Shown here: piece after piece, positions 10,560-99,400 of the stretch
Numbering within the stretch: the first letter of the stretch is position 1
Layout: the number at the start of each line of letters is the position of its first letter
DNA from: Octopus vulgaris
Lineage: Eukaryota
Direction: 5' to 3'
DNA length: 124,000 bases
Assembly: GCA_951406725.2 (NCBI GenBank)
Contig: OX597814.1
Coordinates: forward strand, 169,280,001-169,404,000
Translations under genes and position numbers: made by a program
Notes under the pieces: model-generated
What the model saw: only the letters and a program-made list of their open reading frames with translations
What the model was told of the DNA's origin: nothing
The model's database searches: none

Positions 10560-10745
10560 TAGTTAATCCAAACAAGAAAGCACAAAAAAACACAACAATG
10601 CGAGGACGTGGAACAAATATAGTATTATTGGACACTCAGGAAAGAAGGAGGATTTAACGTTTCGAGCGGAGCTCTTCGTCGGAAACATAGGAGAAGGGAA
10701 GACAGATGAAAAAAAATCGCCAACGGTACACACGCGGTCACATTT
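10560..10745 (-). mobile_element. Penelope-like terminal fragment with hammerhead-like motif (10652-10686)
   Basis: Minus strand GTTT-CCGACGA-A-GAGC-TCC-GCTC-GAAACGT-T-AAAT; a relative at 123221-123262 has an intact CTGATGA. Confidence 0.55.
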
Positions 10746-13116
10746 ATATATATATTTATCTATGTATGTAGATGTCTATATATGTGTATGCTAGTGTAAA
10801 TTTTAATACTATGTATTGTTTTGGTGTTATCATGAGGTATACAGTATGTAAAATATTAACGATCTTCTGAGTTACTTTATTTCCCCCGAGGTATCAATCT
10901 ATATAAACCAGTGAAGATCAGCCAGAGACTTACATCGCTACATAGTCAACTTCAATATATTCTAGTCTGGTGAAGATTCTGAATGCAAATTCTGGCTAGG
11001 TGGAGTGATTGAGAGAGCTTTTAAAGTTGAGTTGTTTTATCTCTACCTGATAAAGAATAATATTTGAGCCGTCAAATTTATAAGTTTCAAGGATGGTTTT
11101 TCCCTTTAAGATATTAAAATGCCGCCAGAAATACAATAAAAGTTGTCTGCAAATATCTTTAGTACAATTTCATCATAATTTGACTAAGAATATGCTTGTG
11201 TATTGTGCTGTTATTTTTAATGTTATGGTGACCAGCCTGTGGTGGTATAGGTATTCAAACTATTTTGGTATTCTATTAGAATACCAAAATAGTTTGAACA
11301 CTACATTTCTCTAGAATTTATTAAAGCTGTTGCTATACCAAAGTCTAAGTATTTTAGTTCAATATTATTTCATTCTTGGCAATATCACATTAATTCCTCC
11401 TGCACCATATCTTGACTTTAACTGTTGTTAGGCTGTTATGAGGTACACATACTTTTGCTGGGCCAGAAAGGTGAGAAAATATTGTGAAAAGGCATTTGGT
11501 ATAGATCTCTCAATTTATCCATTTCTTACTTGTTTCAGTCAGACTGCAGCCATGCTGGGGCAACACCTTGAAGGATTTAGTCAAATAAACTGACACCAAG
11601 TACTTTTTGTTTCTCAAGTTTGGCACTTTTTGCCAAACTGCTGGGTTATGAGAACACAAACAAAGCAACACTGGTTGCCAAGTGGTGGTGGGGACAATCA
11701 TAAACACACATATTCACATGTGCACACACATATCATCATCATCATTACCACCACCACCACTACCACTACCACAACCACCAAAACCACCACCACAACCACA
11801 ACGACGACGACGACGACCACCACCACCACCACCACCATCACCACCATCATCATCATCATCATCATCATTTAACATCTGCTCTCCACATGTTGAGCTTCTT
11901 TCAATTTCTATCTACTAAATCCACTCACAGGCTTTGGTCAGCCCAAGGCTCTAGTAGAAGGTACTTGCCCAAGGTACCACACAATGGGACTGAATCCAGA
12001 ACCATGTGACTGGGAAGCAAACTTCTAATCACATAGCCACACCTGCACCTGTTTTCCTAATGTATCTTAAACAAGACATATTCACTGGCTATGGCCAAGC
12101 TGAAATACCACCTTCAAGGATATATTTACCAATTATACTCACTGTTCTCCCTCCCAATTCTTGTTGTATCAACTGGGACTTATTTTATCCACTTGAGAAA
12201 GATGATTTATCAGTTTGGGTCTGCATGGGATTTGAACTCAGAACATAAATGTTGTAACTAAAACCCTCGAAGTATTTAATTCTATAAATTATCGATTCTG
12301 CTATCTGTCTACCTTAATTAAATCTTTTTTTCATATTAAATAATAAGTAAATGCGCCCTTTTAAAGCCTAGTCAGGCTCATGGGCCCGGTTTCCTGGTTT
12401 CTATGGCGTATGTGTTCCTCAGCTGGATGGGACGCCATAACCACTAAGCCACGCACCTCCACTTTTCTTTTTACATATTACTGTTTCTTTTCCTTTTAAT
12501 TACCATCTACCTGTGCACCTATAAAATATAATGTAGACATCAAATATTTTCATATTATGACAGGCTATAGAGACAAGCACAAAATGTGTGTTCAGATGAG
12601 TATAACCTTCTGATGAGAAAAACAAAAATGTACTGATAGGAAATTAGATTACATGGAATATATTTTCTTCGTTTTCTCCAAGTGCCAGCCAGAATTGGAA
12701 TCCTGTCATGTCGGCTTGAATGCCCTATCTTGTAATAACAATGAAGGACAGGTTATAAATCAAAATGTGACTTTCACACTTCCTGTTAGCTATCAAAGCA
12801 ACAGTAAGATAGAAAGTTATGAAAATTGAAGCTGGCCTTCCGACATTATGCCAATGTCCAGAACATTCTACTGCATTCCACCATCATCCATTCTGCCTGT
12901 TAATCGTCGCTAACCATAGCCAAATATATCATTAAAGAGCACTGAGTATAAATGAGAATATCATATTGCTAACATCATAGAATAGAACACTACGTTTTTT
13001 TATATATATTTATATACCGCCACTTGATATGTGTGTATGCATGTGTATGTGAGTAAGAAGGTATTAGTGTATATGTGTGGAAATACAAGCATACATCATA
13101 CATAGACACATATTTA

Positions 13117-21800: not shown

Positions 21801-22152
21801 ATACACATTTTCCCTCTGTCTCCTTATTTCTCATTTGATTGTTTTATTTGAAATGGGACTACAATGCGGCTAAATTGCTATCATTACAATATTGTTATTA
21901 CTATTATTTATCCCTGGGATTAGGGTTCATGCTGTTACCCCACTTGTTCTTTCCGCTGAATTCAGTGCCCTTTGTTATGCAGATGGATTCAGTAATTTAT
22001 CCGAGGGACAAAACCTGCAAGTGAATAAATCGCATTTTTTCTAACCTTGCTTACTGATTAAAATGAAAAAGGTTACTCCAAATTTTAATTAAGGTTATTT
22101 AAACTTGAAATATAGTGAAGAGCAGATCAGATCTTTAGAAGTATAGTGACAA

Positions 22153-22193
22153 CTCCAGACATGTTTCAGTCTTGTTAGACCTCATCAGCAAAG
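22153..22193 (-). ncRNA. Minimal type-I hammerhead ribozyme-like motif
   Basis: Minus strand CTTTG-CTGATGA-GGTC-TAACAA-GACT-GAAAC-AT-GTC-TGGAG; helix III palindromic (ACATGT); helix I relies on G-U pairs. Confidence 0.55.
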
Positions 22194-24450
22194 CGTTATC
22201 TAACTATCACTGCAAACCTTAGATGGATAGAGAATGTATATGATTTCTGTGAATGAAAACGGGTACATTCATGGTTGTGTGGTCAAAAAGCCTGCTTCTC
22301 AGCTATGTAGCTTCGGGATGAATCCCATTGTGTGGAACCTGGGGCAAGTGTCTTCTACTTCATCTCCAGGCTGGATTTGGTAGACAGAAACTGAAAGAAG
22401 CCTGTAGTATATATGTATGTTTGTGTGCATGTTTATGTGTGTGTATGTGTGTGTGTGTGTGTGTGTGTGAGAAAGTTAGCATCTCCTTGCTTTGCATGAT
22501 GGTTGTAAATGTGTGTCACTGTTATACAACACTGACATTCATTTCCAATCTTCTTTTCTACTCTAGGCACAAGGCCAAAAATTTTTGGGGAGGAGGCCAG
22601 TCGATTAGATCGACCTCAGTACACAGCTGGTACTTAATTTATTGACCCCAAAAGTATGAAAGGCAAAGTCGACTTCGGCGGCATTTGAACTCATAACATA
22701 AAGACAGCTGAAATACTGATAAACATTTCACCCGGTGTGCTAACGTTTCTTATTTCTTTATTGTCCACAAGGGGCTGAACATAGAGGGGACAAACAAGGA
22801 CAGACAAAAGGATTAAGTCAATTAGATCGACCCCAGTGTGTAACTGGTACTTAATTTATCGACCCCGAAAGGATGAAAAGCAAAGTTGACCTCGGCGGAA
22901 TTTGAACTCAGAATGCAACAGCAGACGAAACACCACTAAGCATTTCGCCCGGCTTGCTAACGTTTCTGCCAGCTTGCCACCTATGCCATGGGGAAATATT
23001 ATCTTACTTGGAAACAGGTGAGGATTAATAAGAAGAGCATCTAGCTACAGAAAATCTGCCTCAACAAATTCCATCTGATCCATGCAGACATAGAAAAGTA
23101 GACATTAAAATCCCTTTACACAAAGCCTGAAACTTGTGCGGGAGGGCTGTCAATTTTATTGACCCCTAAAAGGATGAAAGGCAGAGTCAACCCTGGTAGG
23201 ATTTGAATTCAGAATGTAAGGATGGACGAAATGCCACTAAGCATTTTGCTTGGCATGCTAATGATTCTAACAGCTCGTCACCTTTAAAGTAGATGTTAAA
23301 ATAACGATGATGACAAAGACAATGATGATAATGAACAGAGAGGCATTAGAGATTTTAAAAGTAGCCAGAGCAAAAATACCCTGGGATGCCTATTGAAACC
23401 TCGGCAGCATAGTACAAGCATACTTGTAGCAAGCCAAGAAATTTTGATTAATTAGATATGAAATGCAGTGGAGAATGTGCGTGATCTTTAGCAGTAGATC
23501 ATCATCATCATCGTTTAACGTCCGTTTTCCATGCTAGTATGGGTTGGACGATTTTGAATGAGGGCTGGCACCAGATGGCTGCACCAGGCTCCAGTCTTGA
23601 TCTGGCAGAGTTTCTACAGCTGGATGCTCTTCCTGATGCCAACCACTCTGAGAATGTAGGGGGTGCTTTTTACATGCCACCGGCACGGGGGCCAGTCAGG
23701 CGGTACTGGCAATGACCTCGCTCGAATCTTTTTACACGTGCCAGTGAAGATATAGACTGATAATGGTGATACTGCAAATGAAATCAGATAAGCTATGAGT
23801 GATAAACTGCAATAAAGCTTGTAGACATGTGTCCACATCTACACTGTATCTACTGTTATGTACTGTCACCACTGGTAACTTAAATCTAACACAGTTGACA
23901 GGTCAATAAACAATAGCAGGGAACAACAAAAGCAACTGCAATGAAAAAAGCACCAGCAATGAAATTCACACTTAAACATGTATGTAGACACAGACGCAAA
24001 TATGCGTAAGAGCTGCATTGAAAAGATGCAATACCACTAAAATTACACGCACACACACATACACACACACACATGCACAATACAAACATAATAATCACAT
24101 ATTCACAAATACATACACATATTTGCACACGCAGTCTCTCACCTCCCACCACCATCACTAGTAAGTACACAGAGACCAAACAGAGACTGAAATCAGTCAC
24201 GGAGAAGTCGTTATAAAGGCTGCAGACATAAATTAAAGACTTTGACAAATGAATCAATTAACAAAGATGTGATCTACAACAAATACATGTATTTTTATTG
24301 GCAGAATAATCCTCCTCAAACCTAACAATAACTGTTTCAACATAACGATTTAACATCACGAATCTTGTGACACAAAAAACGCAAAATGCGTAAAGTACAT
24401 GTATGCAAGTTTATAATATATATATACATATTTGAGCAAGCGTGTGCATG

Positions 24451-24607: not shown

Positions 24608-24694
24608 ATCAAAATAAGCAACAAGGATATCCAGAGGTAATGCAGTACTGCATTATTGTACTGCATTACCTCTGGATATCCTTGTTGCTTATTT

Positions 24695-24698
<4 letters not shown>
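24608..24698. repeat. Fold-back hairpin at the end of a repeat fragment
   Basis: ATCAAAATAAGCAACAAGGATATCCAGAGGTAATGCAGTAC and its exact reverse complement; an unfolded relative lies at about 64840-64965. Confidence 0.9.
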
Positions 24699-24738
<40 letters not shown>

Positions 24739-24746
<8 letters not shown>

Positions 24747-25427
24747 AAAGGGCTTAGTAAAATAAATTACTTTGCCACATACTGAACTCATTAGAAATAG
24801 TAGCTAAAAAAACTTTTTTAAAACTATTTCTAATACTTAAAGAAAATCTCTCTCATATAGTGTTTGCTCAACTCAACCCACGAAAGTATGGGGGTAAAGA
24901 CATTAAAAAATCAAATGCAAAGGTTATTTGAGAACGTACGTTTCTAGATTAGTCAACTCGACATTTCTATCATCAGCTCAGAACTCCTTGGTTTGGATTT
25001 GAAAACACTGAAAGTGGGAGCATACCCTTTCGGCTTCTTATCGCTTCTGAAGATCTGCTCGAAACTAACAGTGCCAGCAAACTCAAAGTTTGCTGGCACT
25101 GTTAGTTTCGAGCAGATCTTCAGAAGCGATAAGAAGCCGAAAGGGTATGCTCCCACTTTCAGTGTTTTCAAATCCAAACCAAGGAGTTCTGAGCTGATGA
25201 TAGAAATGTCGAGTTGACTAATCTAGAAACGTACGTTCTCAAATAACCTTTGCATTTGATTTTTTAATGTCTTTACCCACATACTTTCGTGGGTTGAGTT
25301 GAGCAAACACTATATGAGAGAGATTTTTAAGTATTAGAAATAGTTTTAAAAAGTTTTTTTAGCTACTATTTCTAATGAGTTCAGTATGTGGCAAAGTAAT
25401 TTATTTTACTAAGCCCTTTTATATAAT
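24739..25427. repeat. Near-perfect 689-bp palindrome (3-nt loop at 25084-25086) of Penelope-like sequence
   Basis: Arms are reverse complements with few indels; mirror ORFs 24953-25177(-) and 24993-25217(+) are nearly identical. Confidence 0.95.
25190..25241 (+). ncRNA. Minimal type-I hammerhead ribozyme motif (mirror copy at 24929-24980 on minus strand)
   Basis: TGAG-CTGATGA-TAGA..GTC-GAGTT-GAC..TCTA-GAAAC-GTAC-GT-T-CTCA: helix I TGAG/CTCA, intact core, helix II TAGA/TCTA, palindromic helix III ACGTACGT, GUU triplet. Confidence 0.7.
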
Positions 25428-25520
25428 GTAATAATTTGAATTTGCCTTAAATGGTCCCTTTGCATACTGAATACTTGGTGAAATTGATTAATAATTAATT
25501 AATTTTACCCTCAATTGTTG

Positions 25521-25557
<37 letters not shown>

Positions 25558-25638
25558 TGTATATATACATATATTAATAGTAATGGTAAGACAACAAAAG
25601 AATGAAAGAGATTTCGATATTATGTAAATAGAGGAATT

Positions 25639-27329
25639 TATCTGTAATATAATATGTGACAATTATTCGGTTGCCATAACAAAACTCTGAGTTTCAGATG
25701 TTGGAGTAGAAACCTGCTCCAGCATCTTTTCAGTTATCAAGGCAATCAAAATATGCTATGAAAATGACCATTAAACAAAGTGAAATTACTATGTAACTGA
25801 CCGTTATTACAACAAAAGAGCTATTAGAATGATCGTTAAATAAGGGAAAAAAGCGAAGGGGAGGAAGTAAAAAGTAAAGGAGTAAAAAAGCTCATAGCAT
25901 TCGTATATGTGTGCATGTACATACATACACAGGCATGCACGCACACCCATGTGCATGTGCCTATATGCATATGCACACTCACATGAAACACACATATGCC
26001 AATAGATGCACATATATATGCAACCATGCATGTACACATATATATCCACACACACGTGCTCACATACATGTGCACATACCCATATGCATACAGTTATATT
26101 CAAATACACATCTAAAAATATGCAGATGCTATATGCCCACTCACACCCTTGTGGAACACATGCATGTACACCTACATATATATGCAACCATACACATGTA
26201 CATATACACGCACATATATACATACTCACACACACAAACATGCACGATGTACACATATGTATATCCACACACACATGCACATGCACACACATGTGCACAT
26301 ACCCATACATGCACAGTTATATTTAAATGCATGTCTAAAATACGTGCATGCTATATATGCATATGCTCACTCACACTCATGTGGAACACTCACATGTATA
26401 CCCACATATATATATGCAACCATACACATATACATATATACATACCCGCACACATGCATACACACACGTGCACACAAAAAAGTTCATATACATGTCTTTA
26501 TATGCACATGCGCAAGAAAAATGCAGAGTGAAAGGTAAAATACAGAAAAATGTGTAAAAATATATGAAGCAATAAAAATATAAAAATATATCTCTATAAA
26601 TATGTAAAAAATGTATAAAAAATATGTACAAAATATGTGTAGGTATGTACACGTGTGTGTGTGTGTGCATCTGTGTGTGCAGATATACATATGTGTACAT
26701 CATGCATGTGTGTGTGTGTGCAGATATGTATATATGTACATGTGTACAGTTGCATATATATATGTGGGTGTACATGCATGTGTTCCACGCAAGTGTGAGT
26801 GAGGATATCGCATGTGCGTGTTTTTAGAACTGTATTTGAATATATCTGTGTGCATATGGGTATGTGCACGTGTGTGTGTGTGCGTGCCTGTGTGTGGATA
26901 TGTATATGTGTACATGCATGGTTGCATATATATGTACATCTGTTGGTGTATGTGTGCATGCGCATGTCTGTGTTTCATGTGAGTGTGAGTGAGCATATGC
27001 ATATAGGTACATGTATGTGGGTGTGTGTGCGTGCCTGTGTATGTATGTACATGCATGCATGCATGATTGCTACGAGCATTTTTATTCCTTTACTTTTTTT
27101 ACTTTCTCCCCTTCGGTTTTCCCCTTATTTAACGGTCATTCTAATAGCTCTTTTGTCTTCATAACGGTCAGTTACATAGTAATTTCTCTTTGTTTGATGG
27201 TCATTTTCATAGCATATTTTGATTGCCTTGATAACTGAAGAGATGTCTGAGCAGGTTTCCGCCCTGAGATCCGAAACTCAGAGTTTTATTATGGCAACCT
27301 AATAATTGTCACATATTATATTACAGATA
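25639..27329. repeat. Diverged inverted duplication of a Penelope-like end plus CA/GT-rich block
   Basis: 25639-about 26290 is the reverse complement of about 26650-27329, with scattered substitutions. Confidence 0.85.
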
Positions 27330-27375
27330 TATAAATATATATATATATATATATATGCACATACACACACACGTA

Positions 27376-43700: not shown

Positions 43701-45293
43701 GATGTTGATGATGATAAAAGCTTTTATGTTTAAAATAATGCAATCCAAAATTTTGTCAGTTCCAATTGATGGAACTTTGATTTTAAGATAAAATCTGCTG
43801 CAATGTCTATTTGCTTTTCCTTTTCTTTGTGTGAAAGATTGCTCAAGTTTCACATTTATAAATGGGTTTTCAACCTCAAAATTGGTTTGCAATTTTCATC
43901 TAGAAAATACTTTGTTACTGATTAATTTCATATCAGATTAATGTTGCAGAAGTGAATATTTTATAGTTTAATTTCAGGATGTTCAGTTTGTCAGCATAAA
44001 ACCGGCTGTGTGGTTAAGAAACCCACTTTGCAACCATGTGGTTCCAGGTTCAGGTTCAGTCCTATTGTATGGCACCTTCAGCAAGTTCTTTGTTCCTACT
44101 ATGGCTCTGGACCAACCAGTGCCTTGTGAGTGAATCTGGTAGATCAAAACTGGAAGCTTGTCAATTTTTCTCTCCTCATTTATTTTTTCTCTAGAAGAGT
44201 TTAATCTGGAAACATAAAAGAATTTACCTTAAAGAATTTTCATGATGTTAACCTAATATGCTATTTTTTTTTTTTACCTCATCTTTGTGTTATTTATAAT
44301 TTTTGCACTATATTATAACTATAACTATATTATTAAGACTCAAGACTATTGAAAAGGTTGCAAGACGCAACGGAAATTTTAGGAAAATAGAAATAAGAAA
44401 TAAGTGGAAATTTTACCGGTGAGTGTGTTACATTATAAGGCACAAAAAGAAAATGACTCTCCCCAGACACAACAGAATATGCTTCAACACACGAACTCAA
44501 ATAAAGAATCTTGCAAACCAAATCCAAAAACGAAATATAGTATACATATGTACTTATGTATATACAAAAAATGGTAAAAACTCCCTTTGGTCATGAATGA
44601 CCATGGGATTGCACCTAGAAAGTTATCCTCCAAGGCAAAGATCTGGGTAAAGTTATTTATGGAAGACCAGCACTCACCCATGCATACCAGCCTCTCCATG
44701 CTACTGATGTTACCCAAGGGAAAGGCAAAGACCAACACAACTTGGCATCAGTCACTTCACAACTCATTTCTACAGCTGAGTGAACTGGAGCAACATGGAA
44801 TGAAGTGTCTTACTCAAGAACACAACACACAGCCTGGTCCGAGAATTGAACTCACTACCTCATGATGGTTGTGAGCTCAACACTCTAACCACTGAGCTAT
44901 ATATGCATATTTGCATGTATGTCATTGTGTTAGTGCTTTCCACTGCTCGACGACCAGTATTGGTTTGTTTACATCCCTGTAACTTAGAGGTTTGGCAAAA
45001 GAGACCTATAGAATAAGTATCAGACTTGCAAGATAAGTACTGGGTTCAACCAATCTGTTTGATTAAAACACTTAAAAGCAGTGCTCAGTACAGTCACAGT
45101 TCAATACCTGAAATGAACAGAAATAATAAGAAAAAAGGCATGGCAGTGTGGTAAGAAGGTTGCTTCCCAGCCACATGGTTCCAGATTCAGTCCCACTGCA
45201 TGGCACCTTGAGCAAGTGTCTTCTACTATAGCCCTGGGCCAACCAAAGCATTATGAGTGGATTTAATAGATGGAAATTTGAAAGAAACTCGTC

Positions 45294-51310: not shown

Positions 51311-51793
51311 ATGGAGTCTATTTTCTGTACATTTTCAGTATTTATTGTACCTGTGCACCTTCCGCACACAAAAACTATACTCCCAGTTAACCTTCCTCTG
51401 ATATTGTTGCACCTCTTATGTTTCTATAGTTTACATTAAGATCAAACAGACTATCTACCTGAAGGGATTTGTGATTTACCTTCCTTCCTACTTACTAAGA
51501 CTTTGATTTGTTTGATTAAAACCCTTCAAGGCAGTGCCTTAGCATGGCCGCAGCCAAATAGCCAAAACAAATAAAAATACTAAAGGAATATATATATATA
51601 GCCATAATATATCGGTAGCCACTACACACATTTTTTTCTCTCCTTGTATCTTTCTGTGTTCCTTTCTGTGGAAGAGCGTAGGCTCGAACCGTGAACCACT
51701 TTTTCAATTCCCAAGCATTATACTAATACATCTGTTTGTTTTGTACACCACCTGTCTTTGTCTTTTGTTTTTTTATGAATTCCCCCATATATA

Positions 51794-57617: not shown

Positions 57618-57759
57618 GCCTTAGTGCTTATTTAATAAAAGAAAAAAGGCCCTAAACAAAAGCAGTATGACATGGTTTGTTTTCATATCTGGTTTGCAAA
57701 ATTCATTATGTGAATTTGTGTGTTGAAACAAATTTTGTTGTGTCTAGGGACGGTCATTA

Positions 57760-58055
57760 TGCCAATGTTATCAACACATGCACTGGTTGAATTTCATTCC
57801 TTTATTATTAGTCACTTGGTTAAATATCCAACTAATTGGTTGTTTTGTTTAATTTGGTTAAACAGTGAGTCATTTGTTTTGCCTTTGTTTGTCAAAGCTC
57901 TTTTGTTGCTACTTGTAACCTTTCCTAAAACAAAACAAATGATTTTCTGTTTAACCAAGTTCAATGAACAATTGATTAGTTAGTTGGATATTTAACCAAT
58001 TGACTAATAATAATAGAGTGGAATTGAACCAAAGTGTGTGTTAATAATACTGGCA
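57760..58055. mobile_element. Hairpin-type MITE with long imperfect inverted arms
   Basis: TTATTATTAGTCACTTGGTTAAATATCCAACTAA mirrored by TTAGTTGGATATTTAACCAATTGACTAATAATAA. Confidence 0.7.
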
Positions 58056-60635: not shown

Positions 60636-61255
60636 GTGTGTGTGTGTGTGTATGTGAATGAGTATATTGATCACTGTATCAATCAACCTACCTGCATCAT
60701 CTTCTTACACTCATACGCTCACATATGTTCATTTATTCCTCTCTGTCTCTGTGCACTAGGTATTTGATGCCAGAAGCTACTTCTGTCACTAATCCTTGCC
60801 TGTTATCAAGAAAGAGGCTTTTTATTCTAAAGAAAAGAGTTTTGAAAGTGCACAACAGCCAGAAAGTGCAGAATAGGTAATGGGTGGGTGTATATTCATA
60901 TTTCAGGATTTCATTAAATGATAATGAGGATAAAAGTACTGCTGCTGGAACCACATAAAAGTTGCCCATTACACTCTGTGGAGTGATTGGTGTTAGGAAG
61001 GGCATCCAGCTGTGGAAACCATATCAGAACAGACAACGGAATTTGATGCAGCCTATGGCCTTACCAGCTGTGGTCAAACTGTCCAACTCATGCCAGTATG
61101 GAAAACGGATGTTAGATGATGATGATAATCATTATTATTTAATGTCCATCTTCCATGCTGGCATGGGTTGGACAGTTTGACCACAGCTGGTAAGGCCATG
61201 GGCTGCACTAAGATCCATTGCATGTATGTTTGTCAGTGAGTGCATGTGAGTATGT

Positions 61256-62112: not shown

Positions 62113-62115
<3 letters not shown>

Positions 62116-62352
62116 ACAACTTATAAACAAGGGCAAAAGAAAATTATTTCCATGTCAATATGCTGATAACAGACTCTTAAATTGTCAATTTCCACATATC
62201 ATTATATACTCACTGTTGACTAGCTTCCTGATTTCAATACAACATATTTCTATAGTGAGTATATAATGATATGTGGAAATTGACAATTTAAAAGTCTGTT
62301 ATCAGCATATTGGCATGGAAATAATTTTCTTTTGCCCTTGTTTATAAGTTGT

Positions 62353-62355
<3 letters not shown>
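62113..62355. repeat. Hairpin with ~102-bp arms and 39-nt loop, flanked by (TA)n on both sides
   Basis: 62113-62214 is the reverse complement of 62254-62355 with few mismatches; a direct partial copy lies at about 61961-62010. Confidence 0.9.
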
Positions 62356-62411
<56 letters not shown>

Positions 62412-62667
62412 GTTCAAATTTACAGAAAAACAAAAGATGAAGACAGGTGTTGGAACAACAAGCAGGTGTATTGGTTTAACACTTTGGAAAAATGGAGAAG
62501 TCTTTTACATTTCCTGCTTATGCTCTTCAACAGAAAAGAATAAGAAGAAAAAATGGAGAGAGAACAACTGTGAAATTCAGCAGTCCAACATGGTGAGTTG
62601 ATTCTTTTATTCTTATATTCTTTTATATGTTTCAGCGTTGTGGCTGTGGCCATGCTGGGATAATAAA

Positions 62668-63348: not shown

Positions 63349-65060
63349 CTTTTAAGTGTTTAGAAATCTGATGATCATATGTCTCAAAAGTTTTTCTGAC
63401 ACATCAAATATTCATTATAATTTAAGAATTTTATCATTTCAGTGTCAGTGCATTAAGAACTACTCGATCGACTAATGTTTGCTTCATGTTTCTTTCATAT
63501 TTCTTTTGCATGGATACATCATCAGTATAGTTATTTTTTATTTTTCTATTACCCCTTTCATTTTGCTTATGCCTTTTCTGAAGATATACTTAAATATGTA
63601 TTTTTCAATTTTATTTTTGTTTATTTCGTTTTGGCTATTCAATATATAATTTACAAAAATTGCTGGGTTTTTTTTTTTTTTTTTTTTTTGTTAAATAACA
63701 CTGAAATAACAGAGAAAATGAGAAAGAAGAAATTTGAAAACAAAGTTTTTGTAAAGCTAATTTAGTACAGCTTAAATTTTCTAGTGTGTGATAATAGCAG
63801 AAAATTAGTTTTGATAGGTTTTTCAAAACTCAATATAGTATATCCAAAATGATTTGTGAAAAATCTGATTAACATTTGATTTAAAATATTTTTTTTTTCT
63901 CCTCTCATTTCTAGTGGTATTATGTTCACAATTTCTGAAATGTATTTCCTATTTCATATTATCATCAAAATCATCATCATCATTATTATTATTATTTTGC
64001 TTCAATATATTTTCTCTCCCTTCAAATAAATGACTGCCATAGAGATAATATGAGAAAGAATATATTTAATTTCAAATAATATATTTTAAGGTCCTCTCTC
64101 TCTCTCTCTCTCTCTCCTTCAACTGCTTCTTTTTGTCATCTGTCTAGTGCAATTCCTACCCTCCATTTTTTATCCATCCATTATCTTTTGTCCTTGACTT
64201 GTTTCAGTCATTTGACTGTGGCCATGCTAGGGCACTGCTTTGAGGGATTTTAGTCAAACCAAGCAACCCTATTATTATTATTATTATTATTATCATCATC
64301 ATCATCATCATCATTATTATTATTGTTTAAAAACCTGGTACTTATTCTATTAAACTCTTTTGCTGAGCTGCTAAGTTACAGGGATGTAACCACACAAAAA
64401 CAGGTTGTCAAATGATGGTGGGGGACAAATACAGACACAAAGACACACACACATAGATATAAATTCATATACATATACGATGAGCTTCTTTCAGTTTCCA
64501 CCTACCACATCCACTCACAAGGCTTTGGTTGGCCCCAGGCTATAGTAGAAAACATTTGCCCGATGTGCCACACAGTGGAACTAAACTTGGAACCTTGTAG
64601 TTGGGATACAAACTTCTTACCACACAACCATGCCAGTGCTTATATATTTATATAATCAAAAAGCATGTTCTTTGTCCATCTCCTTACCTTCTTGGAGGTT
64701 TTAGGTAAAATTATACCAAGGTGTCCAACTGTTTTAATTTAATTTAATTCTATGTATTTATGCAGCTGAGGATTGCTCTGCATTTAAATTGTTGTAATGA
64801 TTGTATTGTTCAATTAAATGGAGTCACTTGAAACGATCATACTGCATTACCTCTGGATATTCTGTTGCTTATTTTGATTTTAATCACCGTATTTTGAAAC
64901 TGTATGGATAATACCGTACTAAATTCTGGTGCCTCAACTTAAGTACCTAATTCATCTGAATCTAAATTTTTGCTTATATATATCGTCTATCTGGATGTTT
65001 TGTTGTCACATTTTTGTATCACCTAACTGTCTGGATGTTTTGCGTTCTTGTCCCATTTTG

Positions 65061-78044: not shown

Positions 78045-78621
78045 ATATATATATATATATGTATGTGTGTCTATGTTTGTGTCTGTATTTGTCCCCCCAA
78101 CATTGACAACCGATGTTGGTGTGTTTACGTTCCCGTAACTTAGCGGTTTGGCAAAAGAGACCAATAGAATAACTACTAGGCTTACAAAGAATCAGTCCTG
78201 GGGTCAATTTGCTTGACTAAACAAGTAAAAGAGTAAAAGAGTATACTGCTTAGAACACATTCAGATAAATTTGTTTTTTTTTTGGTTTTGTTGTTGGAAA
78301 TGGAGATCTTTACCATTTGGTGCCCTGTGCTGAATTTCCGAAATTTTCTGCATAAATGTAGTTTTGTATGCTAATTACGAAAATCACGTTTCTTTGTTTT
78401 TCTTCTTTTTTTTTTAGCAATACTTTCCAGCTTTTGCTCAGGGCCAACAAGTTTGAAGAGAGAGAAAAATCAATTTTATATAAATCAATACTCAACTAGT
78501 ACTCATTTTTTTCTACCCCGAAAGGATAAAAAGCATAGTTGACCTAGACCACATTTGAACTCGGAACGTAAAGAGCCGGAAGAAATGCCACTGAGAGTTT
78601 TGTCTGGTGCAGTAATGATTC

Positions 78622-78820
78622 TGGCAGTCCATTTTGGGGAGGGAATGAAGTTGAGTATATTGACCCCAGTGTTTCACTGGTACTTAATTTATCGACCCTG
78701 AGAGGATGAAAGGCAAAGATCAACTTTGCTTTTCATCCTTTCGGGGTCAATAAATTAAGTACCAATGAAACACTGGGGTCAATGTACTCAACTTCATCCC
78801 TTCCCCCAAAATGGCTGCCA
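78622..78820. repeat. Fold-back palindrome made of the SINE family B 3' half
   Basis: Arms mirror around GCAAAG-ATCAA-CTTTGC. Confidence 0.85.
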
Positions 78821-81097
78821 TAAGTGACAAAATTTGAAACCATTATTATGATTATTATTATTATTATTATTATTGCGACATAAATAATAAAAACAATATC
78901 AAAACAAACCTTTTAACATTGAAATTATTGTTAATTTTAGCCCAACAGAAGCCTCAATAACCGACATGTCAGAAATTGTAATGTGTTTTCCTAGCAACAC
79001 AGTACAGGTAGGTTGCCTCAAAACAATTGTGGAAGCAGATGAAATGATGTTCTCAAGGATACATTTAGGGTTCGGCTTCTGTGGTAGTTAATTTCTTTTA
79101 TTTGGAACTGGTGTACTCATTGAGCCACCTTACCTTTTGCTTTGCTGTGTAAATTAGTTTCATGATGTCAGTTCAGACTTCATGCCAAGATGTCACAGTT
79201 TTATAAGAAACGACCTGGGAATCCAAGACAAAATGTAAAGTTTCTTTACGATCAGTATATTTCTTTCTCAGCTCACATTTAACTACTCTTTTACTTGTTT
79301 CAGTCATGTGACTGTGGCCATGCTGGAGCACCGCCTTTAGTTGAGCAAATCGACCCCAGGACTTATTCTTTGTAAGCCTAGTACTTATTCTATCGGTTTA
79401 TTTAGCCGAATCGCTAAGTTACGGGGACGTAAACACACCAGCGTCGGTTGTCAAGCGATATTAGGGGGACAAACACAGACACACAAACATATACACACAC
79501 ATACATATATACGACGGGCTTCTTTAAGTTTCCATCAATCAAATCTGCTCAAAAGGCTGTGGTCGCCTCGAGGGTACAATAGAAAACATTGTCCAAAGTG
79601 CCACGGTGTTTGATTGAACCCGGAACCATGTGTTTCGAAGCAAACTTCTTATCAAACAGCACGCCTGCGTTGTGATCAGTAAAAAAAAAAAACCCTACGA
79701 ATCTTAATACACTTTCAAGAATAAACGAGTTCTTTTAGCCCTGTACTATTATAGCATTCAAACATATCTTGACAAAAGAAAATATAGCCATTGTTTGCAC
79801 AGTTAACTCAAGATACGATTTTCCCTAAACTCAGTAAGGTCTAAAGCAGTTAGCGGTAAACTGCAGCCTGTAGGACTTGGGACTTTCTAAATGGCACCCT
79901 TAACGAAAAATTACCTCGAATTCTTTTTAGCAGTGCGCCCACCGAACCCAGGTAAAAAAAAAAAGTTACAGGAAAAAAGTCACAGGAAAAAAAAAATGGT
80001 AACGCTAGCACTGTTTCTGCATCTTTCTCTAATAGAGAAGTTAACTGTCGAATTCTCACCCTTTTAAGCTTAATGTGTCAATCAGTTTCTAAAGGAATAT
80101 GCAGAACTGATGGTAAATTAATGATTTTCTTTCCTAGCCAAAATTGCGACTTCTTTTCTATGTGACTTTATTACCGGCCACTGCGCTAACCTGATGATGA
80201 ACCATGTCCCATGTTGCCCGCTTTTCGAAAAACGTAGCTCATTCTTAGTCTAACGAAGTCAAACTGAAAGAATACGTTAGGCAACGATGTAATTCTAGAT
80301 AAAATGAGATGACGGCAAGAGTTAGAATGTTAAATTACGAATACAGTTTATTTTGTATTATAGCTTAAATGGCTAGACACGGGAATCATTAATGTAATTA
80401 TCAAGATGGAATTTACGTGACACTGTGTATAATAAGGTTTAGTAAAATCCATCTTGCGTTAAAATATTAGTAGCTAAATATTCCACGGGTATTCGTATAA
80501 TTAGAGTAATTCTCAAATAGCTATTTGCGTCACCCAAAGTATACAAGGTCATGGCTTTTACATTAATACAGATCCCTTTGTTCATTTTATATTCTATTTT
80601 TATTTTTAAATTCCAATTATCTTCCCAATTTCACTCAAATAACTTGGGTCTACCCTATGTCACGGTAGAATACATTTGCCCAGTTATTGGTTTATGACAG
80701 CGAATCGACTTCTGGAGCATTCAACCATGCTTACGTTCGAGATTTCCTGTTTTTCTTTATTGGGTTTTTCTTTTATTTTGCTATTTTCTTATTTTAATAA
80801 ATTGTATTATTTTTTTCTTTCAATTGTTGTTGTTTTCCCGAGTTTTTATTGAAATATTTCCAGTGTTAAAAAAAAATTATAAAAAGAAGCACGTGTGTGT
80901 TCGTTTTTTTTTTTTTTGTATGTGTGTAATAAATACACACATACAAAAATACAACTACGAAGTCAAACCGAACACGACACGCAATTATACAAAACCAAAT
81001 ACATTCGCATCCATACAAACATACACAGCACGAGCTAATAAGGATCCCCTTTGCTGAACGTTATCGATTGAATTACAAGAAATAACAGCCAAATTAC

Positions 81098-83810: not shown

Positions 83811-86800
83811 TCATCTTGATATCTGCTTATCACCACCTTTCTATCTTTCTATCTATCCGTTTATATTTAACTTGTGAGTATATGATTTATATATATGTGT
83901 GTGTGTGTGTGTGCTAATATTTTCGTATGTTGTGTCAATATGTTCATTTATACGTAAGGCGCCCCTTATTTGTACGAATATATATATGTGTGTGTATAAC
84001 GTAAAGTGCGTACTGATATGTTCGCAACGGGCAAGTAACCCATTAAAACAAATATTTACAAACACCAGAAACAAATAAAGGACAAATAAAGCAATTGCAA
84101 ACAAATTAATAAACTAAACAACATTCGCGTATAGCTAGATATATCCCCATATCTATCAGTGTACTTATATGTATATACGTGTATTCATAAGCATATTCGC
84201 ACGCACATACGTACGTACATATATGCGAACTAACAAAGTGGGTCTCCGTCGGTTTCAATACTAGGAAGTCTGTTATTCGATATACTGAACTTGTGTATAA
84301 ACGAACGAACAAGCGACTTAGTATTCCACGACAGTAATACTTTTTTCCCCCCTAGGGATAGGATTGGCTGTGTGGTTAAGAAACCAGTTTTATCACGAAG
84401 TGGTTTCGGGTTTAGTCACACTGCACGGCACCTTGGTGAGTGGTTTCTACTATAGCGCTGACCAAAGGACGAAGACAGGTGGTGTAGAAAACAAACAGAT
84501 GTATTAGTATAACGCTCAGGAATAGAAAAAGTCTTTTACGTTTCGAACCTACGCTCTTCTACAGAAAGGGACACAGAAAAAACATGGAGAGAAAAAAATG
84601 TGTGTAGTGGCTAACGATCTTATATATATATATATTTGTGTATCTCTGTGTGCAACCATGTAGTAAATATATAAACAGGGCAACTTAATAAGTTCTCCGG
84701 AGATTGAAAAAAATAATGATAATAAATAATCGATGACCAGTCATAATTAATTTTCGAATTTTATTGAATTCTTATCAGTGGGAACTTTCATAAATTAGAT
84801 CTACATTACGATAGTGAGTTGCTAAGCTGTTTATATACTAAACAAATACATTAGTTACAAAGAACTGGGCCTAGTAATTTTTATATTACAAGTGTTTAAC
84901 ACTCTCTTAAATATCAAGAGCCTGTCAACGAGGATCTCAGTTCAGACAGTACCAAGGTATGATATATGGAACCTCTGTGTGTGTGTGTGTGTGGGGGGGG
85001 GGATTGTGCCACACTACAACCACTTGATAACCAGTGTTGGTATGTTTATATTCCTGTTACCTAGCAGTTCAGCAAAAGAGAACAATGGAGTAAGCACCAG
85101 ATTTTAAAATGAATCCTAAAATCCTAAAAAATGAATTTATTCAAATCTAGATTTAAAAATGAATCCTAAAATCCTAAAAAATGAATTTATTCAACTAAAC
85201 AAGTGGTTCTCAACCAAGGCTCATATGACCCTTGGAGGTCCACATAAGATTTTGTTGTTAAAATTTATGAGCAATGAATAGGCGCATGAGTGGCTGTGTG
85301 GTAAGAAGCTTGCCTCCAAACCACAGGGTTCTGGGTTCAATCCCACTGCATAGCACCTTGGGCAAATGTCTCCTACTATAGCCTCAGGCCAACCAAAGCC
85401 TTATGAGTGGATTTGATAGATGGAAACTGAAAGAAGCCCATATATATGTATATATATATACAGGGCCATGAATGATCTTATCCCATATTTTGGATTTATA
85501 TATGTATATATATATATATGTATTTGTGTGTCTGTGCTTGTCCCCCCACCATTACTTGACAACCAATGTTGGTGTGCTTACATCCCTGTAACTTGATGGT
85601 TTGGCAAAAGAGACCAATAGAATAAGTACTAAGCTTACAAAGAATAAGTCCTGCATAGATATATATACAGGCATGCGTACACATGCATATATGTACATCC
85701 ATATATACATGCACCTATATATCCATACATACATGCACATACATATTAGGGTGTGCTGAAAAGTTCCTGACTTTAAGGGTGTCATGAAAGGTCTGGTTGG
85801 AGGCTCAACCTTCTGAGTTTTTTGCAGGGCTTAGAAAAACTGAAGGACCGCTGCAATAAGTGTGTGAGTCTGAGAGAGGAATATGCTGAATAAAATCATA
85901 ATTAGCTGATCCTCCTGTATTTTCTTTTAACCAAAGCCCGGAACTTTTCAGCAATCTCTTGTACATATGGAGGTGCATGGCTTAGTGGTTAGGGTGTACG
86001 CATCATGATCGTAAGATTGTGGTTTCAATTCCTGGACCGGGCAACGCATTGTGTTCTTGAGCAAAACACTTCATTTCACGTTGCTCCAGTCCATGCAGCT
86101 GGCAAAAATGAATAACGTTGTGATGGACTGGCGTCCCGTCCAGCTGGGGAACGCATACACCATAGAAACTGGGAAACTGGGCCCATGAACCTGGCTAGGC
86201 TTTAAAAAGGGTGCAATGGTGGTGCATCAGCATGGCTGCAGCTCTGAGCTGAAACTAGAGAGAAAAAGAAATGTACACTCATGGATATACATATCCTTCT
86301 ATCTATGCATACACATATATATTCACATACATTTATGCATATTTACATACAAGCAAACTCAGATGTCATAATGGAGATATTTTAAATGCTTCCTCATCAC
86401 ATGTATGTACATAAACTGCTTTTATTATGTGTGTCCAGGACTGTCATAGTTGTAGAGCTTGTTGCCTAGCCTGAGGTCAACTGATCAAGTAAAATATTGA
86501 TCAAAGGCACTCCAACTGTGACAATCCTGTCTATATTATCAAATGTTCCCTTTAAGATAGAAGTCACCAGCATCAAAGCCATGCTGTTAAAGTTACAGTC
86601 ACACTGGGCAGGACACATTTCCTGAATGGAAGATTATCTTTGAGACAAGATTGTGCTGTAGGGCGAACTCTCCACATTTGACAGAAGGCTGCCAAAGAAA
86701 GAGTATAATAGGCACTTTGAAGAACTCCCTTGATGTCTATTAAATTGACTATTGACAATTGTCTGCTATTGCTTCCATTTGTGATGTATGGTGATATACC

Positions 86801-96478: not shown

Positions 96479-99400
96479 CATCATCATCATCATCATCATC
96501 ATTTAACGTCCGCTTTCCATGCTAGCATGGGTTGGACGGTTCAACTGGGGTCTGGGGAGCCCGAAGGCTGCACCAGGCCAGTCAGATCTGGCAGTGTTTC
96601 TACAGCTGGATGCCCTTCCTAACGCCAACCACTCCGAGAGTGTAGTGGGTGATTTTATGTGCCACCGACACAGGTGCCAGACGAGGCTGGCGAACGGCCA
96701 CGCTCGGATGGTGTTTTTATGTGCCACCGACACAGGTGCCAGACGAGGCTGGCGAACGGCCACGATCGGATGGTGTTTCTTACGTGCCCACAGCACGGAG
96801 GCCAGTCGATGCGGTACTGGCTACGGCCACGTTCGGATGGTTTTCTTGTGTGCCACTGGCACTGGTACCACAAAGATACAAATTACATTGATGTTCATCT
96901 ATTTTGATTTGATTTGATTTGATTTTCACTTGCCTCAACAGGTCTTCACAAGTGTCACAAGAAGGAAGGAAGGTATGCACAGGTGAACTGACAACGTCCC
97001 AGGTAGGGGCCACGGGTTATGGCCTGACTAGTCTTGCCGGGTCTTCGGATGATGTTTTTATGTGTCTCCGACACAGGTGCCAGATGGATGGTGTTTGTTA
97101 CGTGCCCACAGCACGGAGGCCAGTCGATGCGGTACTGGCTACGGCCACGTTCGGATGGTTTTCTTGTGTGCCACCGGCACTGGTACCATAAAGATACAAA
97201 TTCCATTGATGTTCATCTATTTTATTTTGATTTTCACTTTCACTTGCCTCAACAGGTCTTCACAAGTGTCACAAGAAGGAAGGTATGCACAGGTGGACTG
97301 ACTACGTCCCAGGTTGGGGCCACGGATTATGGCCTGACTAGTCTTGCCGGGTCTTCGGATGGTGTTTTTATGTGCCACCGACACAGGTGCCTAGTCTTGC
97401 CGGGTCTTCGGATGGTGTTTTTATGTGCCACCGACACAGGTGCCGGATGAGGCTGGCGAACGGCCACGATCGGATGGTGTTTGTTACGTGCCCACAGCAC
97501 GGAGGCCAGTCGATGCAGTACTGGCTACGGCCACGTTCGGATGGTTTTCTTGTGTGCCACCGGCACTGGTACCACAAAGATACAAATTCCATTGATATTC
97601 ATCTATTTCGATTTGTTTTGATTTTTTTGATTTTCACTTGCCTCAACAGGTCTTCACAAGTGTCACAAGAAGGGAGGTATGCACAGGTGAACTGACTACG
97701 TCCCAGGTAGGGGCCACGGGTTATGGCCTGACTAGTCTTGCCGGGTCTTCGGATGGTGTCTTTATGTGCCACCGACACAGGTGCCAGATGAGGCTGGCGA
97801 ACGGCCACGATCGGATGGTGTTTGCTATGTGCCCACAGCACGGAGGCCAGTCGATGCGGTACTGGCTACGGCCACGTTCGGATGGTTTTCTTGTGTGCCA
97901 CCGGCACTGGTAACAAAGATACAAATTCCATTGATGATCATCTATTTTATTTTGATTTTCACTTTCACTTGCCTCAACAGGTCTTCACAAGTGTCACACG
98001 AAGGAAGGTATGCACAGGTGGACTGACTACGTCCCAGGTAGGGGCCACGGGTTATGGCCTGACTACTCTTGCCGGGTCTTCTCATGCACAGCATACTTCC
98101 ATAGGTCTCGGTCTCTAGTCATTTCCTTGGTGAGACCTAAAGTTCGAAGGTCGTGCTTCACCACCTCGTCCCAGGTTTTCCTGGGTCTACCTCTTCCACA
98201 GGTTCCCTCAACTGCTAGTGTGTAGCACTTTTGCACACAACTATCTACAGCCATTCTCATCACATGACCATACCAGCGCAGCCGTCTCTCTTGCACACCA
98301 CAATTGACGCTTCTTAGGTTCAACTTTTCTCTCAAGGTACTTACACTCTGACGATTATGAACACTGACATTACACATCCATCGGAGCATACTGGCTTCAT
98401 TTCTTGCAAACTTACGCATATCCTCAGCAGTCACGGCCCATGTTTCACTACCATGTAGCATGGCTGTACGTACACATGCATCATACAGTCTGCCTTTTAC
98501 TCTGAGCGAGAGGCCTTTTGTCACCAGCAGGGGTAAGAGCTCTCTAAACTTTGCCCAAGCTATTCTTACTCTAGCAGTTACACTTTCAGCACACCCACCC
98601 CCGCTACTGACTTGGTCTCCTAGGTAGCGGAAGCTATCAACTACTTCTAGTTTGTCTCCCTGGAACGTGGTAGAAGTTGGTCTCTGCACATTTCCAGTGT
98701 TTATTGCTCCTGAGCATCTGCCACAGACAAAAACTATTTTCCTAGTTAGCCTTCCTTTGACATTGCTGAACCTCTTATGTGTCCATAGCTTACACTTGGT
98801 GCACCTTATAGAGTTTCTACCTACACCTTTTTTACAGATCGAGCAGGGCCATCTACCTGAAGTCGTTTGTGATTGGTCCACCTTCCTACTTATTAGGACT
98901 TTGGTTTTGGCTAGGTTGATTCTAAGGCCCTTCGATTCTAATCCTTGTTTCCACACCTGAAACTTCTCCTCCAGTTCTGATAGTGACTCAGTAATTAGAG
99001 CAAGGTCGTCAGCATAGAGGAGCTCCCAGGGGCATCCTGTCTTGAATTCCTCCGTTATTGCCTGGAGGACTATGATAAATAGGAGGGGACTGAGGACTGA
99101 ACCTTGGTGGACCCCAACCTCTACCCGGAATTCTTCACTGTACTCGTTGCCAACCCTCACCTTACTAGCAGCGTCTCTGTACATGGCTTGCACAGCTCTC
99201 ACTAACCATTCATCTATCCCTAGTTTTCTCATTGACCACCAGATAAGGGATCGGGGGACCCTGTCAAAGGCTTTCTCCAAGTCAACAAAAGCCAGGTACA
99301 AGGGCTTGTCTTTGGCTAGGTATTTCTCCTGCAGCTGTCTTACCAGGAATATAGCATCAGTAGTACTTTTCCCTGGCACGAACCCAAACTGCATATCATC

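What the first reader, a model, noticed from the sequence alone, without database searches (positions are those of the whole stretch)
24739..25427. 689-bp perfect palindrome carrying a hammerhead ribozyme on both strands
Seen: arms are near-identical reverse complements with a 3-nt loop, and the right arm holds a complete minimal type-I hammerhead (25190-25241), mirrored at 24929-24980. Known: Penelope-like elements encode such minimal hammerheads with palindromic helix III, thought to cleave as dimers. Inferred: a transcript from either strand would carry one ribozyme and its exact antisense, forming a ~340-bp dsRNA that could sequester the ribozyme and feed ADAR editing or small-RNA pathways. 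Near-identity of the arms implies recent origin or ongoing conversion.
Basis: partly seen in the sequence, partly recalled or inferred. Interest (0 to 1): 0.85.

Follow-up and report, generated by a model that had tools for sequence, protein, structure and literature searches.

The report
Young palindrome with hammerhead-like motif
A real, nearly perfect 689-base palindrome in an animal genome carries a non-random but atypical hammerhead-ribozyme-like motif in each arm; it is most likely a fold-back pair of mobile-element fragments at a TA microsatellite, a layout already described for Penelope-like elements, and not a new ribozyme device.

Summary
The palindrome is real: 24739-25427, arms of 345 and 341 nt, a 3-nt spacer (CAA) and 340/345 identical positions. 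It is near-perfect, not perfect. Its catalytic core is complete, helix I has 4 bp, and helix III is self-complementary (ACGUACGU). The motif is not a chance match: dinucleotide shuffles give 0.005 hits per window, 539 permuted-core decoys never give more than 1, and the true core gives 3 hits at 2 independent loci.

The motif is atypical. It has U10.1-A11.1 instead of the conserved G-C, a GUU cleavage site, and no bulge after A9. No Rfam hammerhead model matches it, even at E <= 10.

"On both strands" follows automatically from the palindrome. A read-through transcript folds into a -592 kcal/mol hairpin that locks the motif away.

The best reading is a young fold-back (head-to-head) pair of a hammerhead-bearing retroelement fragment at the edge of a (TA)21 tract. 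The Penelope-like-element literature already describes inverted truncated copies, microsatellite targets and opposite-strand hammerhead pairs 100-700 bp apart.

The arm has no other copy in the window, and no collection available here holds this host's genome. Family membership, ribozyme activity and genomic (versus assembly) reality therefore remain untested.

The parts
24739..25083 (-). Left arm of the palindrome (345 nt). The element's sense strand, judged by the hammerhead-like motif, is the minus strand, so its 3' side points left toward the (TA)21 tract.
25084..25086 (.). 3-nt central spacer CAA: the turn of the fold-back.
25087..25427 (+). Right arm (341 nt). Sense strand is plus, with its 3' side pointing right.
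25190..25241 (+). Hammerhead-like type-I motif. Helix I is 25190-25193 paired with 25238-25241. Core CUGAUGA is 25194-25200. Helix II is 25201-25225 (4 bp, a 3x3 internal loop, 3 bp, loop GAGUU; closing pair U-A). GAAA is 25226-25229. The self-complementary ACGUACGU is 25229-25236. U17 is 25237, and the predicted cleavage falls between 25237 and 25238.
   Evidence: No Rfam hammerhead hit.
24929..24980 (-). Identical mirror copy of the motif in the left arm.
24698..24739 (.). (TA)21 microsatellite abutting the left end of the palindrome. Probable target or junction.
25428..25524 (.). 97 nt of unique sequence between the right arm and the next (TA)16 tract. This could be original flank, or a 3' extension of the right-hand copy. 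Unresolved.
25525..25556 (.). (TA)16 microsatellite to the right.

Best explanation
The locus is a genuine, evolutionarily young fold-back (head-to-head inverted duplication) of a non-coding segment of about 345 nt. That segment derives from a hammerhead-bearing mobile element of the Penelope-like-element (PLE) pLTR or retrozyme kind, and it sits at the edge of a (TA)21 microsatellite.

How it probably formed (inferred). During insertion, or during repair at the TA tract, a nascent strand turned back on itself through a 3-nt loop and copied itself. That produced two arms that meet at the same nucleotide, with the element's 3' sides facing outward.

What the motif is. The hammerhead-like motif is inherited baggage, present once per arm. 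Because a palindrome reads the same on both strands, it automatically appears on both. Any transcript that crosses the centre zips into a duplex of about 340 bp that buries the motif, so the palindrome is not a ribozyme device. In its present form the motif is probably a weak or dead ribozyme (U10.1-A11.1, GUU site).

Shown: the palindrome, the motif's anatomy and non-randomness, the outward polarity, the TA junction and the folding energetics. Inferred: the retroelement origin, the fold-back mechanism, the young age and the lack of function.
For: - The motif is non-random. It gets 3 hits at 2 independent loci, against 0.005 per shuffled window and at most 1 in 539 permuted-core decoys. The arm therefore descends from hammerhead-type sequence. 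In animals such sequence is described in PLE pLTRs and in their non-autonomous derivatives (PMC4209133; PMC7229834; bioRxiv 10.64898/2026.07.22.740005).
- The architecture matches published PLE insertion features. PLE copies are 5'-truncated, often with an adjacent inverted 5'-truncated copy that forms inverted repeats, and they favour microsatellites including (TA)n (PMC8557442). Dual min-HHRs 100-700 bp apart on opposite strands have been reported (PMC4209133). A PLE protein cleaves and extends both target strands (PMC11167929).
- Both sense copies here point away from the centre, and the left end abuts (TA)21.
- The window shows that (TA)n tracts are insertion hot spots. Five of 12 hairpin palindromes abut (TA)>=6, P = 3.5e-4. 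A separate repeat family of about 190 nt with a hammerhead-like box is flanked by (TA)n.
- A second palindrome, 78619-78823, is a head-to-head pair of a 5'-truncated SINE.
- Arms that meet within 3 nt and are 98.6% identical fit one fold-back synthesis event of recent date.
- Energetics rule out ribozyme folding in a read-through transcript.
Against: - The arm has no other copy in 124 kb.
- The window holds no PLE reverse transcriptase or GIY-YIG remnant.
- The motif fails two of the four hallmarks listed for PLE min-HHRs: G10.1-C11.1 and the extra nucleotide after A9.
- No Rfam hammerhead model matches it. Those models also miss the other minimal motifs in this window, so this counts for little.
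- Other hairpins in the window are MITEs with shared TIRs, or a tail-to-tail SINE pair. Processes that ignore polarity or have nothing to do with retroelements therefore also make palindromes here.
- The host genome could not be reached, so copy number, family alignment and empty sites are all unknown.
Confidence: 0.45

Rival explanations
1. DNA-level inverted duplication. A replication or repair template switch at the fragile, hairpin-prone (TA)n tract duplicated pre-existing local DNA in inverted orientation. That DNA happened to contain an old solo hammerhead relic.
For: - Hairpin palindromes with unrelated sequences are enriched next to (TA)n.
- The neighbouring hairpin 24608-24698, on the other side of the same (TA)21 tract, folds back the end of a repeat whose other copy at 64840-64964 is not folded.
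- SINE-derived palindromes have mixed polarity.
- The window has no PLE proteins, and the arm is single-copy in the window.
Against: - It needs a coincidence. With about one other perfect-core relic per 124 kb, a given 345-nt segment has well under a 1% chance of holding one.
- The turning point of the fold-back is 345 nt away from the TA tract, not at it.
Confidence: 0.2
2. A hairpin MITE or foldback-type DNA transposon with a TA target site, in which the two halves of the element are its long terminal inverted repeats.
For: - Genuine MITEs with shared TIRs occur in this window: TGTTGTGTCTGGGGAGAGTCATT lies at both ends of 122547-122824 and also at 44452 and 57736.
- A TA/TA flank can be drawn around the palindrome.
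Against: - Its termini recur nowhere else in the window.
- The TA 'duplication' cannot be told apart from the palindrome itself or from the microsatellite.
- A hammerhead core inside a DNA transposon would have no explanation.
Confidence: 0.12
3. An assembly or sequencing artefact, such as a fold-back chimeric read or a mis-traversed repeat graph. The real locus would have a single arm.
For: - A palindrome this perfect with a 3-nt spacer is expected to be unstable in vivo (established knowledge on long palindromes).
- All three arm differences lie in homopolymer-like contexts typical of consensus errors.
- PLE-type structures are known to disturb assemblies (PMC8557442).
Against: - The palindrome is internal to the window, and its two flanks are different unique sequences. 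The far flank is not the reverse complement of the near one, as it would be for a chimeric read.
- The window holds a graded series of older hairpins at 71-100% arm identity, so palindromes are a natural feature of this genome.
Confidence: 0.1
4. A functional locus: a transcribed hairpin RNA whose ribozyme is regulated by sequestration and which feeds ADAR editing or small-RNA pathways.
For: - The hairpin RNA would be extremely stable.
- Long inverted repeats are known substrates for Dicer and ADAR (established knowledge).
Against: - There is no evidence of transcription or conservation.
- The motif lacks the conserved G10.1-C11.1 pair and uses the poor GUU site.
- One transcript holds only one sense copy, so it cannot form a dimer in cis.
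- The single arm substitution is G/T, not A/G.
Confidence: 0.05

Closest known systems
Minimal hammerheads of Penelope-like elements, including 'dual min-HHRs on opposite strands 100-700 bp apart' (Cervera & de la Pena 2014, PMC4209133)
   Same: Type-I topology, a 4-bp helix I, a long helix II, a self-complementary helix III that implies a dimeric mode, and two copies about 300 bp apart on opposite strands.
   Different: The closing pair is U10.1-A11.1 instead of the highly conserved G-C. There is no extra nucleotide after A9. Helix II is interrupted by a 3x3 internal loop. H17 is U. No PLE ORF is nearby, and family membership could not be tested.
Complex tandem/inverted insertions of Penelope-like elements (Craig et al. 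2021, PMC8557442; Arkhipova 2006)
   Same: Truncated copies in inverted orientation that form inverted repeats, with insertion at a microsatellite ((TA)n is reported for Naiads).
   Different: Only a pair of 345-nt fragments is present, with no full-length element. The arms meet at the same nucleotide, which two independent truncations would not give. The 30-40 bp 'tail' signature cannot be assessed without a family consensus.
Metazoan non-LTR retrozymes (Cervera & de la Pena 2020, PMC7229834; bioRxiv 10.64898/2026.07.22.740005)
   Same: Short, AT-rich (34% GC), non-coding sequence with one type-I hammerhead-like motif. Solo monomers are common and dispersed.
   Different: Retrozymes are direct tandem repeats that give sense dimers. 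This locus is an inverted pair with no direct repeat.
Palindromic AT-rich repeats (PATRRs) of human chromosomes 11, 17 and 22 (from established knowledge; not searched here)
   Same: A near-perfect palindrome several hundred bp long with almost no spacer, prone to forming a cruciform, and associated with AT-rich sequence.
   Different: This palindrome is only 66% AT. It lies beside a (TA)n tract and is not itself made of AT-rich sequence. It carries a ribozyme-like motif. Its instability and polymorphism are unknown.
Hairpin-RNA (hpRNA) endo-siRNA loci of Drosophila, and inverted-repeat ADAR substrates (from established knowledge)
   Same: A long inverted repeat that, if transcribed, would form a perfect dsRNA of hundreds of bp.
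   Different: No evidence of transcription, small RNAs, editing or a target.

Membership tests
Hammerhead ribozyme (type I) | Invariant core: C3 U4 G5 A6 N7 G8 A9, G12 A13 A14, A15.1-U16.1, and H17 not G | tested here: met
   CUGAUGA at 25194-25200, GAAA at 25226-25229, U16.1 at 25236, U17 at 25237
Hammerhead ribozyme (type I) | Three helices around the core, with helix I open | tested here: met
   Helix I has 4 bp. Helix II has 4 + 3 bp. Helix III has 2 bp as a monomer or 8 bp as a dimer. The hammerhead fold is -2.7 kcal/mol, against -7.4 for a competing MFE fold.
Hammerhead ribozyme (type I) | Conserved G10.1-C11.1 pair closing helix II | tested here: not met
   The pair is U25201-A25225. 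The G-C-restricted descriptor gives 0 hits.
Hammerhead ribozyme (type I) | Match to the curated covariance models (Rfam hammerhead clan CL00010) | tested here: not met
   No hammerhead hit at gathering threshold in the window, nor at E <= 10 in 5 kb or in 91 nt. The models also miss family M and give only 17.8 bits to the motif at 22152, so their sensitivity to minimal motifs is low.
Hammerhead ribozyme (type I) | Occurrence beyond chance | tested here: met
   0.005 hits per shuffled window. 539 decoy cores average 0.0037 hits with a maximum of 1, against 3 for the real core.
Hammerhead ribozyme (type I) | Self-cleavage at the predicted site; covariation among homologues | not testable with these tools
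   No homologues could be retrieved, and there is no bench assay.
PLE minimal hammerhead (PMC4209133) | Short helix I (4-5 bp), with a palindromic 15.2-16.2 / loop 3 | tested here: met
   Helix I is UGAG/CUCA. AACGUACGUU is a perfect 10-nt palindrome.
PLE minimal hammerhead (PMC4209133) | An unpaired nucleotide between A9 and 10.1, and a long helix II of 6-8 bp | tested here: not met
   No bulge can be drawn without unpairing the closing U-A pair. Helix II has 7 bp but is split by a 3x3 internal loop.
PLE minimal hammerhead (PMC4209133) | Location in the pLTR of an element that encodes RT plus a GIY-YIG endonuclease | tested here: not met
   No GIY-YIG or PLE-type ORF lies near the palindrome or among the 150 longest complex ORFs of the window. 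Only LINE-type RVT_1 was found. Linkage at the genome level could not be tested.
PLE insertion architecture (PMC8557442) | Inverted truncated copies with 3' ends outward, at a microsatellite target | tested here: met
   The sense motifs point outward from the centre. (TA)21 abuts the left end. The 'tail' signature could not be tested.
Non-LTR retrozyme | Direct tandem repeats, each with a hammerhead | tested here: not met
   Self-BLAST finds only the inverted copy, with no direct repeat of the arm.
MITE / foldback DNA transposon | Multiple copies that share terminal inverted repeats and target-site duplications | tested here: inconclusive
   The termini are unique in the window, unlike the true MITE TIR tested. 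A TA duplication cannot be told apart from the palindrome or the microsatellite. The genome-wide copy number is unknown.

The most novel reading that the evidence does not exclude
The palindrome is a transcribed hairpin-RNA locus born from a hammerhead-bearing retroelement. Its ~340-bp dsRNA, either diced or ADAR-edited, would silence the parent ribozyme-element family in trans. That would be a ribozyme-retroelement-derived 'immunity' hairpin, and the non-canonical U10.1-A11.1 hammerhead might be a lineage-specific active variant.
Probability: 0.05. Interest if true: 0.6.

Novelty: new member of a known kind. Interest (0 to 1): 0.3.

Why it matters
If the palindrome is genomic, it is a clean and very young example of how hammerhead-bearing retroelements, or fold-back synthesis at TA microsatellites, create long perfect palindromes. 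Such palindromes are potential fragile sites and potential dsRNA sources in an animal genome. The locus also shows that this unidentified host carries several independent hammerhead-like sequence types, all of which depart from the canonical G10.1-C11.1 rule. That would make the host useful for studying how minimal hammerheads decay or diversify. The locus does not, by itself, reveal a new mechanism.

Tried and rejected
- **Rfam at three scales**: no hammerhead match for the palindrome's motif. The only hits were generic long-hairpin matches to miRNA precursor models, far below gathering score, and I treated them as artefacts of the perfect stem.
- **Independent assemblies of the junction**: I looked up the two 74-aa ORFs that span the centre as exact products. 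Nothing is on record.
- **Metagenome DNA scans**: the motif gave 0 hits. As a control, the window's abundant SINE also gave 0 hits. The collection therefore lacks this organism and the null result says nothing.
- **Host identification through the intact RT**: the best relatives are only about 59% identical, so I did not name the host. The SINE and microsatellite content reminded me of cephalopod genomes, but that comes from memory and is unverified.
- **pLTR-ORF-pLTR reading**: I considered the left-arm motif and the motif at 22152 (same strand, 2.8 kb apart) as the two pLTRs of one PLE. Rejected: their flanks share no homology, and the DNA between them encodes no RT or endonuclease.
- **Retrozyme tandem reading**: rejected, because there is no direct repeat.
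- **A single 'RT snap-back at the 5' end' rule for all of the window's palindromes**: rejected. Palindrome 61034-61220 is tail-to-tail, centred in the SINE's (GAT)n 3' tail, and 122547-122824 is a MITE.
- **Homology of the arm to the hammerhead-like family M**: none.
- **Supplementary sequence sets of PLE hammerheads**, wanted for building a covariance model: not held.

Full report
**Observation: the palindrome**

The inverted repeat is real. It spans 24739-25427.
- The left arm is 24739-25083 (345 nt).
- The spacer is CAA at 25084-25086.
- The right arm is 25087-25427 (341 nt).

It is near-perfect, not perfect: 340 of 345 aligned columns are identical. The differences are one G/T substitution at 24891, a 1-nt indel in a T-run at 24814, and an AAG indel at 24840-24842. 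All three fall in homopolymer-like contexts. They could be real slippage or consensus errors. The arms are 34% GC.

**Observation: the motif**

- helix I: UGAG paired with CUCA
- core: CUGAUGA
- helix II: 25 nt (UAGA/UCUA, a 3x3 internal loop, GUC/GAC, loop GAGUU)
- GAAA
- helix III: the self-complementary ACGUACGU
- U17, so the triplet GUU is 25235-25237

An identical copy lies at 24929-24980 on the minus strand.

**Is the motif chance?**

No.
- A descriptor just loose enough to accept it matches dinucleotide shuffles of the window 0.005 times on average.
- Real DNA has more stems than shuffled DNA, so I also ran a decoy control on the real sequence. I permuted the letters of the two conserved boxes and kept every helix rule. 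The 539 decoys average 0.0037 hits and never exceed 1. The true boxes give 3 hits at 2 independent loci.
- The second locus is 22152-22194 on the minus strand. It has a GUC site, a palindromic ACAUGU helix III, and a weak Hammerhead_HH9 alignment (17.8 bits, E = 0.036 in a 151-nt search).

**Is it a good hammerhead?**

Only partly. The invariant core is intact, but several features are off.
- The pair closing helix II is U-A. PMC4209133 lists G10.1-C11.1 as highly conserved.
- The extra nucleotide after A9 that is typical of PLE minimal hammerheads is missing.
- GUU is a permitted but poor and rarely used site (my own knowledge of the NUH rule).
- The hammerhead fold is -2.7 kcal/mol, while a competing fold is -7.4.
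- No Rfam hammerhead model reports the motif at gathering score, at E <= 10 in 5 kb, or at E <= 10 in 91 nt.

The Rfam null is weak evidence. The same models also miss another minimal hammerhead-like box in this window.

**What the palindrome means for the RNA**

- The two strands of a palindrome read the same, so 'a hammerhead on both strands' adds nothing to 'a hammerhead in the arm'.
- A transcript that crosses the centre folds into one hairpin of -591.7 kcal/mol (z = -70).
- The motif pairs with its antisense at -92.6 kcal/mol. The intermolecular helix III that a dimer would use is worth only -9.8.
- Such a transcript holds one sense copy and one antisense copy. It cannot form the tandem sense dimer these minimal motifs are thought to need (PMC4209133).
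- The centre lies 151 nt upstream of the predicted cleavage site. If the arms were copied from RNA, that RNA had not been cut there.

**Context**

The window is animal DNA: 36.6% GC, dense microsatellites, tRNA-derived SINEs and LINE-type RTs. I could not identify the host.
- The best relatives of its intact RT are about 59% identical.
- Exact-product look-ups found nothing.
- The metagenome collection lacks even the window's abundant SINE.

No paralogue or orthologue of the arm could therefore be fetched. The arm and its termini are unique within the window. It contains no meaningful ORF. No PLE protein remnant (GIY-YIG) lies near it or among the window's 150 longest complex ORFs.

**The palindrome is one of a class**

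The window holds about a dozen hairpin palindromes with short spacers and 71-100% arm identity. Five of 12 abut a (TA)>=6 tract, against a null of 5.7% per palindrome (P = 3.5e-4). This one is the longest and cleanest.

The class is heterogeneous:
- 122547-122824 is a MITE. Its terminal repeat recurs at 44452 and 57736.
- 78619-78823 is a head-to-head pair of a 5'-truncated SINE.
- 61034-61220 is a tail-to-tail SINE pair centred in the element's 3' microsatellite tail.
- 24608-24698, on the other side of the same (TA)21 tract, folds back the last 41 nt of a repeat. The other copy of that repeat, at 64840-64964, is not folded.

(TA)n tracts also receive other insertions. A repeat of about 190 nt, which I call family M, is flanked by (TA)n. 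It carries a hammerhead-like box with the PLE hallmarks: a bulged A, G10.1-C11.1 and a minimal ACGU helix III. None of its four copies has an intact core, and three have U at position 6.

**Best explanation (confidence 0.45)**

The locus is a genuine, young fold-back pair of a hammerhead-bearing retroelement fragment at the edge of a TA microsatellite.

The literature already describes each component:
- PLE copies are 5'-truncated and often come with an adjacent inverted truncated copy.
- They favour microsatellites, including (TA)n (PMC8557442).
- A PLE protein cleaves and extends both target strands (PMC11167929).
- Dual minimal hammerheads 100-700 bp apart on opposite strands were noted in Schistosoma (PMC4209133).

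In this locus both sense copies point outward and the left end abuts (TA)21.

The arms meet within 3 nt. That fits one nascent strand turning back on itself better than it fits two independent truncations. This step is inferred.

**Rivals**

- DNA-level template switch at the TA tract that happened to capture a solo relic: 0.2.
- Hairpin MITE: 0.12.
- Assembly artefact: 0.1.

**Verdict**

The structure is a new member of a known kind. Interest is modest (0.3), because the arrangement is already described for PLE-type hammerheads, the motif is atypical and probably inactive, and nothing points to function.

Whole-genome copy analysis, read-level validation and a cleavage assay would settle the matter.

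Noticed in passing
window 22152-22194 (-): A second, independent hammerhead-like type-I motif: GCUUUG CUGAUGA GGUCU-AACA-AGACU GAAA CAUG U C UGGAGU. It has a GUC site and a palindromic helix III. The pair closing helix II is G.U (or there is an extra U before G12). Rfam gives Hammerhead_HH9 17.8 bits, E = 0.036 in a 151-nt search. It is single-copy, lies next to SINEs, and shares no homology with the palindrome arm.
   Followed up: partly
window 84463-84613 (-), 51616-51781 (+), 62412-62572 (-), ~10560-10760 (-): 'Family M': a non-coding repeat of about 165-190 nt inserted in (TA)n tracts. It carries a hammerhead-like box with the PLE hallmarks (bulged A after position 9, GAGC/GYUC helix II with G10.1-C11.1, GAAACGU, 4-bp helix I). 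No copy has an intact core: three have U6 and one has C4. It may be a decayed PLE-dependent element, or an unusual variant.
   Followed up: partly
window 24608-24698: A perfect 41-nt-arm hairpin with a 9-nt loop, immediately left of the same (TA)21 tract. Its left arm is the end of a 126-nt repeat. The other copy of that repeat, at 64840-64964 (-), continues without folding back. The centre contains a nested 16-nt palindrome, AATGCAGTACTGCATT.
   Followed up: partly
window 25617-27352: A large, older inverted repeat (arms 25617-26310 and 26635-27352, about 82% identical) made of CA/TG-rich low-complexity sequence. It starts about 60 nt after the (TA)16 tract to the right of the palindrome. Three palindromes in a row are thus separated by TA tracts. 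The weak mir-297/mir-466 Rfam hits there are low-complexity matches.
   Followed up: no
whole window (12 hairpin palindromes): Hairpin palindromes with short spacers occur about once per 10 kb. They are enriched next to (TA)>=6 tracts: 5 of 12, P = 3.5e-4. One example, 62114-62354, has (TA)n on both sides.
   Followed up: yes
window 78619-78823 and 61034-61220: Two palindromes built from SINEs with opposite layouts. 78619-78823 is head-to-head and 5'-truncated at the centre. 61034-61220 is tail-to-tail and centred in the SINE's (GAT)n 3' tail, with one full copy and one 93-nt copy.
   Followed up: yes
window 122547-122824, 44452-44474, 57736-57758: A MITE family defined by the terminal repeat TGTTGTGTCTGGGGAGAGTCATT. 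The repeat is at both ends of the 278-bp hairpin at 122547-122824. A solo end lies at 44452, and a copy with 3 mismatches lies at the left edge of the degenerate hairpin 57760-58055.
   Followed up: partly
window 98063-99994 (-): An intact 643-aa LINE-type reverse-transcriptase ORF (RVT_1, E = 1e-32). Its closest relatives in a 5.8-billion-protein collection are only about 59% identical, among them proteins from a catfish and an amphioxus. The host genome is therefore not represented in the collections available here.
   Followed up: partly
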